Below the pieces are notes generated by a model. That model ran no database searches. It worked only from the letters and a program-made list of their open reading frames with translations, and was not told where the DNA came from. DNA of 64,000 bases from Hyphochytrium catenoides (lineage: Eukaryota > Protista > Hyphochytriomycota). The translations under genes were made by a program, and so were the position numbers. Of this stretch, positions 56,401-60,166 are shown piece by piece. Location: contig FLMG01004102.1 in the NCBI GenBank assembly GCA_900088475.1, positions 5,058 through 69,057 on the forward strand, read 5' to 3'. Each line of letters opens with the position of its first letter. The stretch's first letter is position 1.

Positions 56401-59400
56401 CAGCTCTTTTAGATACTAAATATACCTTCTGATTGGGCAATCTCGTCACGTTCTTCATGAGGAGCCAGTCCTGAGTGTTCGAAGACCTTAACCGAGTCGA
56501 GCATCGTAGCAAGCTCCCTATCCTCCTCTTCAATGGGGCCTCTCATGCGGTGATTGGTTGGGTGTCGTTTTTTGCTTTGGCCCCTAAATGAGGAAATTTT
56601 ATTCAGGCTGCCAATGCGCATGCGAGGGCGTTTCGGTGTATCCGACGTCTGTTGGATAACCTGATGTCCCAAGGGGTGAGTTATTTCGTGCAACAAAGCA
56701 TTGGTATGGACAAACATGACAGTAGAACAAGGTCTCAGTAAGGTTGCACCAATCAAAGCAAAAGGTTAACTCTTAGATAGCACGCTGACAGACTTCTTTA
56801 GAATAGAATGATCTTTAAGCTTGACTTACCTCAACATCCAAATCCGCAACGACGCTGCCTCTGAAGGCGTCGACGGAGTTACTAAGGTTGAACACCTGAA
56901 GCAGGACGATACTTTATTAGAAGACACTCCAGGAGGCAAGGATTCGCGGAGCCATTCACAAGACGACCAGTCCGGAGATTGACGCANNNNNNNNNNNNNN
57001 NNNNNNNNNNNNNNNNNNNNNNNNNNNNNNNNNNNNNNNNNNNNNNNNNNNNNNNNNNNNNNNNNNNNNNNNNNNNNNNNNNNNNGGGCTTCACTTATGC
57101 TGGCCGCCAGGTTTACGGAAGAGGTCCCAACGAGGTCCCCGCCGGAACCATCAGGGAACATCGCCCACAACCTGAGAATCTTCGAAGCGGTATCAGATAA
57201 CATGAACTCCGTCTACAGTCTATCCATCTGCCCACATATTGTAGCTACTTATCCATCAAACTACACGAGAGTTTGCCGTTTGGGCCATCGAGAGATTATA
57301 ACTTGTTCCCATGCGCTTACCAGTTCAGTGCTATCGCCTTGATGGACTTCCGGAAACCGAAGGGATAGACTCTCACCGAAGGGCACCGAACACAGCGGGA
57401 CCACAGGAGATGACTGACTGCGTTGTGTAACTTTCTGAAGGAAATCAAGCTGTTAGCATGAGGAACAAAAGTCGTCGGGCATAAACCTAGGTAAGGAGGC
57501 ATTGGGTAGGAGGATCATGCCCGATATCTCAACCATATATTCAAAAAAGTGGTCATGAGAGAGTGACGGCAATAAGCGGCGCTAGAAGCTGTCTTGGAGA
57601 GGGGATAGACTAGAGATTTCACAAAGGCAGGTTTGCAGAGCCAGAACCTCGTTGTCCTTCAGCTCAGGGCCGCACAATTCCTCCACCGGTACAGGAGAAT
57701 GGTCCATGGACTGCGTCGTTCTCAGCTCGCCCCGACTATCAAAGGTGGCCTGGACGACACTACTCACAATTAAGGTATGTACTAGCGCGATCATGCGAAA
57801 GTATATGGTAAGAATATTGACAGGCGAAGACAGTCCTACGTAGGTGAACAACATAGAGGAACGAAAGAGCAACTTACTAGTGTCGGTCTGGCCAAAAAAC
57901 AACTTGCTCTGCTTTGTGAACCGTCATGTTTATTTTTGCGCTGGTCGAACAATGTTATTAAGATCCCGTCCTTGATGGACGCACTCGACGCAGACGAAAA
58001 GCCTACCTCCTTATAAATGATTGAGTTATTGAGCCCTGGCTGAACGGAAGCTTGAGGTTGATAGGAACAGTCTTGCCCGAGAATGCGACAGAAGACGCCA
58101 CGACATCTCCGAACACTTCAAATCTAGTTACCCGACCTTCATCTCTGTCAGCCAGTTGAGAGGCATACCAGATAAGTGCAAACAGGGAGAAGGTCAGTGG
58201 GACGTTGAGGACCTAAGATATGCTTGTTCATCCCAGAGAACGTAGCACGGAAGGAAGGGATAAAGCAGAGAGCGAGCACAACAAATTATATTCCTTTCTT
58301 GCTGCGGAACAGCCTTTAGTCTCACTTGAATCGCAATTTATGGATCCACTTCTGGGTAAACTGGCGGCCGCGGGATCTAACCTAGTGATAGAAGTCGGCG
58401 GTCAGGTCAGCCTCATGACAAGAATTGCAGATTGCGAAGGACGCTAGGTAAGGAAAGGAAGGCATCCGCAACAAGCAAGAAAAGGACGACGGTTATAGCT
58501 TACCTCAAAGGTTTCTGTGCCAGAGACGACAGCAATTTTGCCGTCCAGAGTCATTCCATCCACATGGAAAGAGAGTAGCCTAATGTGCCATAGTGAGATT
58601 TAAGGTTGCAGACGAAAGAGGTAACGTAAAGAGGTCGTAGGAAACAACAGAGAGCCAACCGTTTGCACGTCATTTTAGGGTAACAAGAGAGACGGAGTCA
58701 CCTAATTGTGTTCGTAACTCTGGATAGAAACTCTACAAAACCGGTGTGTCCCTTGTAGTTACCGCTGAAGGGTACCGACGGCAGATAGTTGGAGGTCAGG
58801 AATATCTCCTACAGGAAGGATAGGGTGGGAGAGATGTGTTGAGGTGTCCATGTGCAAAGGTGCAAAGAGTTATATGAGTTACTTCTAAGGGCGGAAAGGG
58901 CTATTCGTCTTACCGGATGCAGAACACTGAGGATGGAGCTGAGAGTCAGCCTGGGTACACGATCTCGGTGTCCTGTCAAGCTCCTGGGGAAGCATCGACA
59001 ATTTTATGTTTGATTCGACTAGAAGGGAGGCTAGACAACGTCCTTACCCTCCTGCTGCGGTGGCAGTATGTATGTCCGATAAGGCCTGAAAAATGGATCT
59101 ATATGCTTCATAAAACTCCACCAGCCCGACCGACTTCTTCTTCGTTATTTCTGTCAAAGTCGAAATTGTTAGCGATCGACTAGAAGGCCGAAAGAACGCC
59201 AGTTTTCAACTTGCCTCGGCCAAGGTGAATCCCATCTTCAACAGTTAGCATCCACATCAATTTCTGTAGATCGGACGAAGCTGCTAGTTTGAGTACTTTC
59301 CCTATCAGAAGCGTCTTGAAGGTTATCGATAATGCACCACGGTGCCGCTAAAGAGTCCCAGTTACCTTCCGCCAGATCGACTCTGAACTGATGCCCTTCT

Positions 59401-60166
59401 CTCTCTTGCAGCAAAGGTCTCTCGTCGTCCTGAGATTATAAGGACAGATGGCAGAGTAGATAAGGTACATTGTCATGGCTCGAGGTCGTAGAGACCTACT
59501 ACACCTACTTCATGGAAGCACACATGCCCACTCACAGCAGCAGGGGAACTTTGAAACTGGTATGCAAAAGGAACAGATGATATGGGAACCGATATTGGAA
59601 CACAGCAATGGCAGTCAATTGAAAATTTGTATCAGCGCTCAGAACGCTTGTCGTGAACAAACTATCGCAAAGAGGAACAAGGAGAGGTGCTGAGAAACCC
59701 AAACGTCAACTTGGCAAGGTGATGATCAAGGCAAAAGGGATACCTTACCACTGAAATGGGTTTAACGTGCTCAAATTTCTTCCCGATGCCAAAGAACTTC
59801 CCCTTAAATTTACTGGGGTCCGAGTTGAGCTGCGCGGCCTCGTATGAGGTGAATCCTGCAAGTCCTCACGTTAGCGCCCAGCATACCGGGGGAGCCGTAT
59901 GCATTATTTCCGCCGGGCATTCTTATTGGTTCTGTCTTCTCCCTTGGTGCCAGCTTCCCAACTATTATTTGAAACGATTCTGCCTAGTTCTTCCCTCTTT
60001 CTGACTGAGTGAATTGGCTTGACTATCAATGGGCTTGCCACTCACGTTTTAGCGCATTGTCTTCAAGTACATAGTACCCCGTCTCCCACTGGCTGCTCCA
60101 GTCCTTCTTCTTCTGCAGATAACCCTCAATTCTCGCTCTAAGACGTGGCTGTCGAATAAGCACCAT
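53493..60166 (-). CDS. Mitogen-activated protein kinase with N-terminal PH and C2-like domains, SEY activation lip
   Basis: The kinase exons are clear ([53 protein letters not shown]). Upstream small exons splice in phase to [56 protein letters not shown] (PH). The join across the N-gap is inferred. Confidence 0.8.
56987..57085. other. Assembly gap (about 100 N) inside the MAPK gene model
   Basis: Run of N. Confidence 0.97.

What the first reader, a model, noticed from the sequence alone, without database searches (positions are those of the whole stretch)
57100..60166. Hidden PH + C2-like module spliced onto a MAP kinase
Seen: about 3 kb that looks intergenic in the ORF track resolves into phase-compatible small minus-strand exons (60166-60046, 59855-59749, 59429-59366, 59301-59215 and others). 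They read [85 protein letters not shown], with all PH hallmarks (EGYLxK, WxxxYxVL, terminal A-S-x6-W helix). A beta-rich linker follows, then a C2-like segment ([24 protein letters not shown]..[gap]..[15 protein letters not shown]) that leads into the kinase. Known: canonical MAPKs have no lipid-binding domains; I recall PH-MAPK fusions from oomycetes (PsSAK1 type). Inference: a membrane-recruited MAPK with two lipid sensors, an architecture I do not know to be described.
Basis: partly seen in the sequence, partly recalled or inferred. Interest (0 to 1): 0.75.

Follow-up and report, generated by a model that had tools for sequence, protein, structure and literature searches.

The report
PH-NTF2-C2 MAP kinase gene, hyphochytrid copy
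The "empty" 3 kb holds small exons that, with the kinase exons downstream, form one roughly 930-residue MAP kinase carrying PH, NTF2-like and probably C2 domains; it is the counterpart in this water-mould relative of a family found in all oomycetes (MAPK10 type), so the gene is real but the architecture is not new.

Summary
The four quoted exons exist at the stated coordinates. With 22 more they give a phase-compatible, stop-free model of 26 exons on the minus strand (60166 to 53493), broken only by a 99-N gap.

- A profile of about 33 oomycete "CMGC/MAPK" proteins of 900-1100 aa matches the window exon by exon and in order: PH, NTF2/SnoaL-like domain, then kinase.
It is the best conserved N-terminal part.
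- In an AlphaFold model of an oomycete member, the stretch between the NTF2-like domain and the kinase is a clear C2 fold (Z 13-14), which Pfam misses.
- In the window itself the C2 is supported only by position and weak collinear profile matches (exons 13-15). The gap interrupts it.

The architecture is not new. This is the SEY-lip MAPK10 family (PlMAPK10, PMC5852060), and databases already tag it PH + Pkinase. What I did not find described is the NTF2-like + C2 pair, or its presence outside oomycetes. The genome is most likely Hyphochytrium catenoides and holds a second, TEY-type copy.

Lipid binding is inferred, not shown. No search or fold was run on the joined spliced protein.

An earlier first-stage note on this same stretch had already read it as SnoaL/NTF2-C2-MAPK.

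The parts
60046..60166 (-). Exon 1: ATG and PH strands beta1-beta3 (EGYLQKK...WETGYYVL)
   Evidence: Family HMM 68-102, E 9e-8. Pfam PH_20 E 8.7e-4 and PH E 0.018. tblastn gives 47-63% identity to about 15 family members. An acceptor-like site lies at 60171-60170, so it may be an internal exon.
59749..59855 (-). Exon 2: PH middle part (SYEAA...SKFKGKF)
   Evidence: AG/GT sites, phase 1 in and 0 out. Weak but exactly adjacent HMM match 105-138.
59366..59429 (-). Exon 3: PH variable loop and strand ([10 protein letters not shown])
   Evidence: AG/GT sites and compatible phase. No profile match; the family is variable here.
59215..59301 (-). Exon 4: last PH strand and C-terminal helix ([10 protein letters not shown])
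   Evidence: AG acceptor, GC-AAGT donor. HMM 188-219. Recurrent collinear tblastn hits.
59048..59150 (-). Exon 5: conserved helix after the PH domain (VEFYEAY)
   Evidence: HMM 226-260, E 0.034 against the whole window and 3.6e-4 locally.
58914..58983 (-). Exon 6: start of the NTF2-like domain
   Evidence: Splice sites and phase fit. Resemblance to the family consensus (xRFFSLLxPD) was judged by eye only.
58702..58808 (-). Exon 7: NTF2-like core ([15 protein letters not shown])
   Evidence: HMM 330-364, E 1e-9. tblastn 41-47% identity.
58504..58579 (-). Exon 8: NTF2-like strand ([12 protein letters not shown])
   Evidence: HMM 388-409. tblastn hits.
58326..58381 (-). Exon 9: NTF2-like strand ([11 protein letters not shown])
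   Evidence: HMM 401-419, E 0.014. tblastn about 50% identity.
58007..58144 (-). Exon 10: end of the NTF2-like domain ([13 protein letters not shown]) and linker to the C2
   Evidence: HMM 418-465, E 5e-11. Matches the paralogue with 0 of 500 shuffles reaching the score.
57878..57940 (-). Exon 11: proposed C2 strand 1
   Evidence: Splice sites and phase only. No significant profile match. Boundaries tentative.
57648..57759 (-). Exon 12: proposed C2 strands 2-3 (holds LRTTQS)
   Evidence: Splice sites and phase only. hhalign places it elsewhere. The donor GAG|GTTCTG is weak. Tentative.
57321..57434 (-). Exon 13: proposed C2 strand 4
   Evidence: hhalign top hit at family columns 536-559, the expected place.
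57086..57179 (-). Exon 14: proposed C2 strands 5-6 ([12 protein letters not shown]), runs into the gap
   Evidence: hhalign top hit at columns 559-586, aligned to the family's VNLA motif. Its score is at the 95th percentile of shuffles.
56987..57085 (.). Assembly gap (99 N) inside the C2-like region
   Evidence: By comparison with the paralogue it hides the end of exon 14, an intron and a few loop residues.
56830..56895 (-). Exon 15: proposed C2 strands 7-8 (FNLSNS...FRGS)
   Evidence: HMM 592-614 is the best hit of the region. hhalign columns 595-614. Matches the paralogue at the same place, p about 0.01.
56426..56660 (-). Exon 16: basic and acidic linker, probably disordered
   Evidence: Open frame, AG/GT sites and phase fit. 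The family has a low-confidence, poorly conserved linker here.
56197..56304 (-). Exon 17: lead-in to the kinase and start of the Gly loop (IGKG)
   Evidence: HMM 676-699.
55918..56021 (-). Exon 18: Gly loop and the AIKK lysine
   Evidence: HMM E 4e-15.
55597..55739 (-). Exon 19: helix C and hinge
   Evidence: HMM E 4e-20.
55228..55334 (-). Exon 20: helix E up to HR(D)
   Evidence: HMM E 2e-16.
55028..55097 (-). Exon 21: catalytic loop (D)LKPSN and DLG
   Evidence: HMM E 3e-10. DLG stands in place of DFG.
54760..54907 (-). Exon 22: activation lip S-E-Y, WYRAPE
   Evidence: HMM E 6e-23. SEY is shared with the MAPK10-type family (PMC5852060).
54451..54546 (-). Exon 23: kinase C-lobe
   Evidence: HMM E 3e-9.
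54086..54247 (-). Exon 24: C-lobe with the MAPK insert
   Evidence: This exon was the query, which found the family. HMM E 5e-14.
53710..53831 (-). Exon 25: end of the kinase domain (HPYF) and docking region
   Evidence: tblastn with P0199: 52% identity, E 3e-9.
53493..53610 (-). Exon 26: C-terminal tail and TAG stop
   Evidence: Phase-compatible, ends in TAG at 53495-53493.

Best explanation
This is one nuclear gene of at least 26 small exons (minus strand, 60166 to 53493) in a hyphochytrid stramenopile, most likely Hyphochytrium catenoides. It encodes a protein of about 930 residues.

The order of domains is:
- PH domain (exons 1-4)
- a short conserved helix (exon 5)
- NTF2/SnoaL-like domain (exons 6-10)
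- a divergent C2-type beta-sandwich (exons 11-15, interrupted by a 99-N gap)
- a charged linker (exon 16)
- a catalytically complete MAP kinase (exons 17-26) with an S-E-Y activation lip and DLG

It is the counterpart of the oomycete MAPK10-type kinases (PlMAPK10 and relatives).

Shown: the exon structure, the homology and collinearity of the PH, NTF2-like and kinase parts, and the C2 and NTF2-like folds in a modelled oomycete member.

Inferred (how it works): the kinase is still switched on by a MAP2K phosphorylating Ser and Tyr of the SEY lip. The N-terminal PH-NTF2-C2 module decides where and when it acts. PH and C2 would place it at a membrane or the cell cortex, probably without Ca2+ and without canonical 3-phosphoinositide binding. 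The strongly conserved NTF2-like domain would act as the regulatory core, through a pocket for a small hydrophobic ligand or as a self-association or partner-binding surface. By analogy with PlMAPK10, its role would lie in growth, sporulation and the zoospore/cyst stages.
For: Gene model: all 26 exons have AG acceptors and GT donors (one GC), consistent phases and no stops.

Homology: kinase exon 24 retrieved P0024 (Pythium oligandrum, 1061 aa). P0024, P0199 and about 15 others align collinearly to the window from exon 1 to exon 25. The family HMM hits are in order, with E from 9e-8 to 6e-23.

Family: 37 proteins besides the query, nearly all of 850-1140 aa, from Phytophthora, Pythium, Aphanomyces, Saprolegnia and others. 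Most carry precomputed PH and Pkinase domains. PH matched in 25 of 25 scanned members and SnoaL_2 in 5 of 25.

One gene: P0199 is one uninterrupted 2,820-nt ORF on metagenome contigs. PlMAPK10 is intronless, 1082 aa, with an SEY lip (PMC5852060).

Folds: in the AlphaFold model of P0170, residues about 235-365 are NTF2-like (Foldseek E 3e-5, TM 0.5-0.65). Residues 392-567 are a C2 domain (Z 13-14, rmsd 2.1-2.8 A over about 120 residues; all 50 listed hits contain C2 domains).

Window C2: exons 13, 14 and 15 each have their top hhalign hit at consecutive places in the C2 part of the family profile. None of 150 shuffled triples did the same.

Second copy: C724:29479-23213 in the same genome has the same domain order.

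Organism: G000 has 4759 contigs. The H. catenoides assembly has 4758 scaffolds plus a mitochondrial genome, and a mean intron of 208 bp (PMC5795050).
Against: - There is no transcript evidence. The splice junctions are predicted, not observed.
- The gap at 56987-57085 lies inside the proposed C2, so continuity there is assumed.
- Exons 11 and 12 have no profile support. The window and its paralogue are barely alignable in the C2 region.
- No family member matches the Pfam C2 model.
- The C2 and NTF2-like folds rest on one predicted model with domain pLDDT of 70-90 but a mean of only 52.7.
- The true 5' end is uncertain, because an acceptor-like site lies 3 nt before the ATG.
- Lipid binding, ligand binding and MAP2K dependence are all untested.
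- N-terminal modules without a kinase exist in Aphanomyces (P0203, P0186), so the module can occur apart from a kinase.
Confidence: 0.8

Rival explanations
1. There are two genes. A PH-NTF2(-C2) protein ends near the assembly gap or in the linker, and a separate conventional MAPK gene starts downstream. The apparent continuity would then be an artefact of choosing compatible splice sites.
For: The gap at 56987-57085 hides sequence. Kinase-less PH-NTF2 proteins exist in Aphanomyces (P0203 and P0186). Some deposited oomycete models are N-terminal fragments only (P0170, 710 aa). Exon 16 is an unconserved linker.
Against: Exons 15, 16 and 17 join in phase with canonical sites and no stop. Exon 15, after the gap, still matches the C2 end of the family and of the paralogue. 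Single-ORF orthologues carry all parts. The second copy in this genome has the same order. The MAPK10-type kinase clade, marked by its SEY lip, was seen here only with the long N-terminal region.
Confidence: 0.06
2. It is one gene with PH, NTF2-like domain and kinase, but in this organism the stretch between the NTF2-like domain and the kinase has decayed into a disordered or non-C2 linker. In that case exons 11-14 are partly mis-predicted.
For: The region has no significant sequence match to the family HMM. Exons 11 and 12 align elsewhere. The paralogue comparison supports only exon 15. The individual hhalign scores lie within or at the edge of the shuffled range.
Against: Five phase-compatible exons with canonical sites fill exactly the space that the C2 occupies in relatives. 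Three of them have their top hits collinear within the C2 columns, which 0 of 150 shuffled triples achieved. The VNLA and LSN...F.G motifs of the family recur. The paralogue's C2 half gives a weak NT-C2 hit (E 0.077).
Confidence: 0.15
3. The gene is longer at its 5' end. The Cys-rich, FYVE-like ORFs upstream (61271-60265) would be further coding exons spliced onto the acceptor at 60170, giving a FYVE-like-PH-NTF2-C2-MAPK.
For: A good acceptor (pyrimidine tract plus CAG) lies 3 nt before the ATG. The upstream ORF ending at 60265 would join in phase 0. There is a weak Pfam FYVE hit (E 0.053). Only about 90 nt separate that ORF's own stop from the ATG.
Against: The FYVE hit is far below threshold. 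The upstream ORF has no homologues. No family member and not the paralogue has such a part. The upstream reading frame has its own stop near 60259.
Confidence: 0.15

Closest known systems
Oomycete MAPK10-type kinases (PlMAPK10 of Peronophythora litchii; 'CMGC/MAPK protein kinase' entries of Phytophthora, Pythium, Aphanomyces, Saprolegnia)
   Same: Same domain order and similar size (about 930 versus 940-1100 aa). The S-E-Y activation lip with a short loop is shared. PH exon 1 is 47-63% identical, the NTF2-like exons 40-50% and the kinase exons 47-69% (PMC5852060).
   Different: The window gene is split into at least 26 exons, whereas the oomycete genes are intronless. It has DLG instead of DFG. 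Its stretch before the PH is very short (12 residues), if the ATG at 60166 is the true start. Its C2 region is much more divergent. It comes from a hyphochytrid rather than an oomycete.
Second oomycete PH-MAPK group (P0124 type, about 1330 aa, Phytophthora); PsSAK1 may belong here
   Same: PH domain followed by an NTF2-like stretch and a C-terminal MAPK. DLG as in the window.
   Different: It has T-E-Y with a long activation loop and about 250 extra N-terminal residues. Kinase exons are less similar (44-53% versus 48-65% for P0024 over the same exons). That PsSAK1 carries a PH domain is my recollection of Li et al. 2010; the paper is not in the library, and I did not test which group PsSAK1 belongs to.
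Akt/PKB and PKC (kinases recruited by PH or C2 domains)
   Same: A lipid-binding-type module sits N-terminal to a Ser/Thr kinase, so recruitment to a membrane could precede activation-loop phosphorylation.
   Different: Those are AGC kinases, not MAPKs. By my reading, the two strand beta-2 arginines that Akt uses for PIP3 are Glu and Gly here (Glu and Tyr in the family). No Ca2+-site test was made for the C2.
CaMKII (kinase plus NTF2-fold hub domain)
   Same: It is a kinase joined to an NTF2-fold domain. The CaMKII holoenzyme model appears among the Foldseek hits (rank 38).
   Different: The CaMKII hub is C-terminal and oligomeric. Here the domain is N-terminal, between PH and C2, and its closest structural matches are bacterial SnoaL/ketosteroid-isomerase-like proteins.

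Membership tests
Oomycete MAPK10-type PH-MAPK family | C-terminal MAPK catalytic domain with an S-E-Y activation lip | tested here: met
   Exon 22 reads [15 protein letters not shown]. The same lip is found in P0024, P0155, P0156, P0199 and P0182 and is reported for all oomycete MAPK10s (PMC5852060).
Oomycete MAPK10-type PH-MAPK family | N-terminal PH domain homologous to the family's | tested here: met
   HMM hit on exon 1, E 9e-8. Exons 2, 4 and 5 follow collinearly. tblastn 47-63% identity.
Oomycete MAPK10-type PH-MAPK family | Conserved NTF2/SnoaL-like domain after the PH | tested here: met
   Exons 7-10 match HMM positions 330-465, with E down to 5e-11. The same positions in the P0170 model are NTF2-like.
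Oomycete MAPK10-type PH-MAPK family | C2-fold domain between the NTF2-like domain and the kinase | tested here: inconclusive
   Clear in the homologue model (Z 13-14). In the window there is only positional and collinear weak support for exons 13-15, none for exons 11-12, and a gap inside. A fold of the joined product was not run.
Oomycete MAPK10-type PH-MAPK family | All parts on one polypeptide, in the same order | tested here: met
   The model is phase-compatible and the order of all profile hits is the same. There is no transcript proof.
MAP kinase (CMGC group) | Complete catalytic motifs (Gly loop, AxK, helix-C Glu, HRD, DxG, APE) | tested here: met
   Read directly: GKGSYG, FAIKK, REIK, HRDLKPSN, DLG, YRAPE. 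DLG replaces DFG, as in the P0124 group.
MAP kinase (CMGC group) | T-x-Y dual phosphorylation motif | tested here: not met
   The lip is S-E-Y. Both phospho-acceptors are kept, and this is the known variant of the MAPK10 family (PMC5852060).
PH domain (Pfam PF00169 clan) | Match to the Pfam model above the gathering score | tested here: inconclusive
   Exon 1 alone scores 16-19.7 bits against cut-offs of 25-27; exons 2-4 give nothing. Homologues match in 25 of 25 cases, best E 2e-11. The joined domain was not searched.
PH domain (Pfam PF00169 clan) | Canonical phosphoinositide-binding basic motif (K ... K/R-x-R on strands beta1/beta2) | tested here: not met
   By reading: strand beta-2 is W-E-T-G-Y in the window and W-E-T-Y-Y in the family. 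The comparison with Akt1 is from memory.
C2 domain | Eight-stranded beta-sandwich fold | not testable with these tools
   For the window it needs the joined, gap-closed protein. It is met for homologue P0170, residues 392-567.
C2 domain | Sequence match to Pfam C2 models | tested here: not met
   No member out of 25 matches PF00168. The only hit is a weak NT-C2 match (E 0.077) on the paralogue's C-terminal half.
NTF2-like / SnoaL superfamily | Alpha+beta cone fold and a SnoaL-type sequence match | tested here: met
   Foldseek E 3e-5 to 1e-4 against NTF2-like and SnoaL-like structures. SnoaL_2 is hit in 5 of 25 members, best E 0.004. This holds for the homologues; the window exons are tied to them by the HMM.
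PsSAK1-type PH-MAPK | Orthology to P. sojae PsSAK1 | not tested
   No PsSAK1 sequence or paper was available. The held papers that cite it do not describe its domains.

The most novel reading that the evidence does not exclude
The PH-NTF2-C2 triple would be an undescribed regulatory unit that arose before oomycetes and hyphochytrids split. Its most conserved part, the NTF2-like pocket, would bind a small hydrophobic ligand, or drive self-association as the CaMKII hub does. MAPK10-type kinases would then be gated directly by a metabolite or membrane signal rather than only by a MAP2K cascade. In Hyphochytrium there might also be a FYVE-like N-terminal extension.
Probability: 0.12. Interest if true: 0.65.

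Novelty: new member of a known kind. Interest (0 to 1): 0.35.

Why it matters
The finding corrects a stretch that looks intergenic into a real, many-exon gene. It extends a family so far seen only in oomycetes to their sister group. That dates the fusion of the N-terminal module to the kinase to before the two lineages split.

It also gives that family a fuller domain map. The one functional paper found on this SEY-lip group (PlMAPK10) described only the kinase domain, and databases tag only PH. Here the roughly 700 N-terminal residues resolve into PH, an NTF2-like domain and a cryptic C2.

The oomycete members affect growth, sporulation and infection in plant pathogens. Knowing that the best conserved N-terminal part is an NTF2-like domain with a possible pocket gives a concrete target for mutagenesis and ligand searches.

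It is not a new kind of system.

Tried and rejected
- phmmer of exon 1 against PDB sequences gave only a chance RecC hit.
- Pfam on exons 2-4 gave nothing.
- The family HMM restricted to 58020-56300 gave no significant hit in the C2 region; the best was exon 15 at E 0.58.
- blastp and Smith-Waterman of the paralogue's C2 ORFs against the window supported only exon 15. The exon 13 and 14 matches were out of register.
- hhalign of exons 11 and 12 placed them outside the C2.
- The ESM Atlas search with the NTF2-C2 part of P0199 gave no usable hit.
- The PsSAK1 paper is not held.
- The P. infestans kinome paper mentions a PAS domain on a MAPK but no PH on a MAPK.
- The main text of the H. catenoides genome paper has no occurrence of 'MAPK', and its supplementary files held as text have none of Pkinase, PF00169, MAPK or SnoaL.
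- The homologue search with the upstream Cys-rich ORF was blank, and the paralogue has nothing like it.
- Rejected: that the N-terminal exons are chance ORFs, given the collinear E-values. Rejected: that this is an oomycete genome, given the intron-rich structure and the contig count matching H. catenoides.
- Left out by rule: any search, Pfam scan or structure prediction on the joined spliced protein.
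Full report
**1. The observation**

The region was read on the minus strand. The last donor is a GC-AAGT site, which fits the known GC-donor consensus. The window has a 99-N gap at 56987-57085.

Following splice sites and frames, I obtained 26 exons from the ATG at 60166 to the TAG at 53495-53493. Every acceptor is AG and every donor GT apart from the one GC. 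Every split codon is sense, and no exon has an in-frame stop. The only break is the gap, after which I reset the phase. The sum is about 930 codons.

Exon 1 alone gives sub-threshold Pfam PH matches (PH_20 E 8.7e-4; PH E 0.018). The other PH exons are too short to score.

**2. Finding relatives without joining exons**

No search, Pfam scan or fold was run on a joined spliced protein.

- Kinase exon 24 (54086-54247) was scored against 1.8 billion representatives. Among the hits were long proteins with the kinase at the C-terminal end.
- tblastn of these against the window showed that P0024 (Pythium oligandrum, 1061 aa) aligns collinearly. Residues 37-63 fall on exon 1, residues 288-420 on exons 7-10, and residues 714-1037 on the kinase exons.
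- A search with the first 700 residues of P0024 found 37 further proteins, most named 'CMGC/MAPK protein kinase'. Nearly all are 850-1140 aa long. They come from Phytophthora, Pythium, Globisporangium, Plasmopara, Bremia, Hyaloperonospora, Lagenidium, Aphanomyces, Saprolegnia, Achlya and Thraustotheca, and most carry precomputed PH and Pkinase domains.
- A profile search found no named member outside oomycetes.
- The nearest full-length relative of the window's kinase exon is P0199 (939 aa). It is one uninterrupted ORF on metagenome contigs.

**3. Exon-by-exon homology**

I built an HMM from 33 family members and searched all 3,076 stop-to-stop segments of the window in six frames. It hit only the minus strand of this locus, in strictly increasing order:

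| HMM positions | Window coordinates | Exon | E-value |
|---|---|---|---|
| 68-102 | 60154-60050 | 1 | 9e-8 |
| 188-219 | 59323-59225 | 4 | weak |
| 226-260 | 59160-59056 | 5 | 0.034 |
| 330-364 | 58805-58701 | 7 | 1e-9 |
| 388-409 | 58542-58477 | 8 | 0.26 |
| 401-419 | 58381-58325 | 9 | 0.014 |
| 418-465 | 58155-58012 | 10 | 5e-11 |
| 676-1022 | 56266-53709 | 17-25 (kinase) | down to 6e-23 |

In a search limited to the N-terminal stretch, exon 2 also aligned at the adjacent positions 105-138. About ten further members gave the same collinear tblastn pattern. The PH domain, a conserved middle domain and the kinase are therefore homologous to this family, part by part.

**4. What the middle is**

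- Pfam finds PH in 25 of 25 scanned members (best E 2e-11), SnoaL_2 in 5 of 25 (best E 0.004), and C2 in none.
- I modelled P0170, a 710-aa N-terminal fragment from Plasmopara halstedii, with a 25-sequence alignment. The mean pLDDT is low (52.7) because of long disordered stretches. Three folded blocks stand out: residues 60-170 (PH, pLDDT about 65-75), 235-365 (70-85) and 392-567 (75-90).
- Foldseek against the PDB gave NTF2-like, SnoaL-like and ketosteroid-isomerase-like proteins at E 3e-5 to 1e-3, together with C2 domains.
- The second-look aligner put residues 392-567 on C2 domains with Z 13-14 and rmsd 2.1-2.8 A over about 120 residues. The matches include dysferlin, CEP120, SHIP1/2, Itch, Munc13, PLC-delta and cPLA2, and all 50 listed rows contain C2 domains.

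So the family is PH, NTF2-like, C2, linker, MAPK. Judged by the window-to-family scores, it is the best conserved part of the N-terminal region.

**5. The C2 in the window itself**

Here the evidence is weaker.

- The family HMM has no significant hit between 58012 and 56300. The best is exon 15 at E 0.58 among 42 local segments.
- hhalign of single exons against alignment A2 put the top hit of exon 13 at columns 536-559, of exon 14 at 559-586 (on the family's VNLA motif) and of exon 15 at 595-614 (on the LSN...F.G motif). These are consecutive places in the C-terminal half of the C2.
- With 150 shuffles per exon, single top hits fell inside the C2 columns in 9-21% of cases and near the observed place in 2-3%. 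No shuffled triple was collinear inside the C2. The scores themselves are ordinary, at or below the 95th percentile.
- Exons 11 and 12 aligned elsewhere.
- Against the paralogue, only exon 15 matched at the expected place (p about 0.01).

I conclude that a divergent C2 is likely (about 0.75-0.8) but not shown. The gap removes its beta6-beta7 loop.

**6. One gene or two**

The following points favour one gene:
- Exons 15, 16 and 17 join in phase.
- The oomycete orthologues are single ORFs (PlMAPK10 has 'no intron').
- The same genome holds a second copy with the same order on contig C724. It runs on the minus strand from 29479 to 23213, has larger exons and no gap, and reads DFG and T-E-Y.

Against this, kinase-less PH-NTF2 proteins exist in Aphanomyces, and there is no transcript evidence. 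I put the two-gene reading at about 6%.

**7. Which known family**

[quoted passage not shown] Silencing reduced growth, sporulation, laccase activity and infection, and expression rose in zoospores and cysts. Length, position of the kinase and the SEY lip all match the family found here.

That paper names only the kinase domain. The P. infestans kinome paper does not mention a PH domain on a MAPK.

A second Phytophthora group (P0124 type, about 1330 aa) has PH, DLG and T-E-Y with a long loop. The window combines DLG with SEY and a short loop, and its kinase exons are closer to the MAPK10 type. Whether PsSAK1 (also called PsMPK3) belongs to either group could not be checked. That it has a PH domain is recollection only.

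**8. Organism**

The best relatives are oomycetes, but the gene is intron-rich. The assembly has 4759 contigs. The Hyphochytrium catenoides assembly has 4758 scaffolds plus a mitochondrial genome and a mean intron of 208 bp (PMC5795050). Notes from other agents in this scan reached the same name. I treat the identification as likely, not proven.

**9. Mechanism**

Shown: an intact kinase with all catalytic motifs and both lip acceptors.

Inferred:
- Activation is by a dual-specificity MAP2K on Ser and Tyr of the lip.
- The N-terminal module sets location and regulation.
- In the PH, strand beta-2 reads W-E-T-G-Y (W-E-T-Y-Y in the family), where Akt-type PH domains have R-x-R (from memory). Canonical 3-phosphoinositide binding is therefore doubtful.
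- The C2 matches no Pfam C2 model, and I did not examine its Ca2+ ligands.
- The NTF2-like domain could hold a small ligand or mediate association.

**10. Verdict**

The architecture, however, is that of a known and widespread oomycete family.

The window gene is a new member of that family in the sister lineage. The modest new points are the NTF2-like + C2 annotation of the family and its age.

Noticed in passing
window 60170-61271 (minus strand): An acceptor-like site (pyrimidine tract plus CAG) ends 3 nt before the ATG of exon 1. Upstream ORFs (61271-60912, Cys-rich with a weak FYVE hit at E 0.053; 60823-60580; 60399-60265) could join in phase, or could be a separate orphan gene that stops about 90 nt before the ATG. 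No homologues were found.
   Followed up: partly
G000:C724:23213-29479, minus strand (L009, L010): A second PH-NTF2-C2-MAPK gene lies in the same genome. It has larger exons, no gap, about 150 residues before the PH, DFG and a T-E-Y lip. Its C2 C-terminal half sits on one ORF (26892-26692) and gives a weak NT-C2 Pfam hit (E 0.077).
   Followed up: partly
P0203 (Aphanomyces astaci, 884 aa) and P0186 (A. stellatus, 1011 aa): These proteins have the PH-NTF2 module but no kinase hit. P0186 has a GAF hit, and its gene name (Aste57867_15776) is consecutive with that of the PH-MAPK gene (Aste57867_15777). The module is therefore reused, possibly after tandem duplication.
   Followed up: no
P0151 (metaclust, 1248 aa): This family member is 66% identical to the Pythium protein and also carries several EF-hand Pfam hits. 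It hints at a calcium-linked variant.
   Followed up: no
window 55028-55097 and 54760-54907: DLG stands in place of DFG, together with S-E-Y. Oomycete MAPK10 types have DFG + SEY, the P0124 type has DLG + TEY and the in-genome paralogue has DFG + TEY, so all four combinations occur.
   Followed up: partly
window 23567-23666: There is a second assembly gap of 100 N in the window.
   Followed up: no
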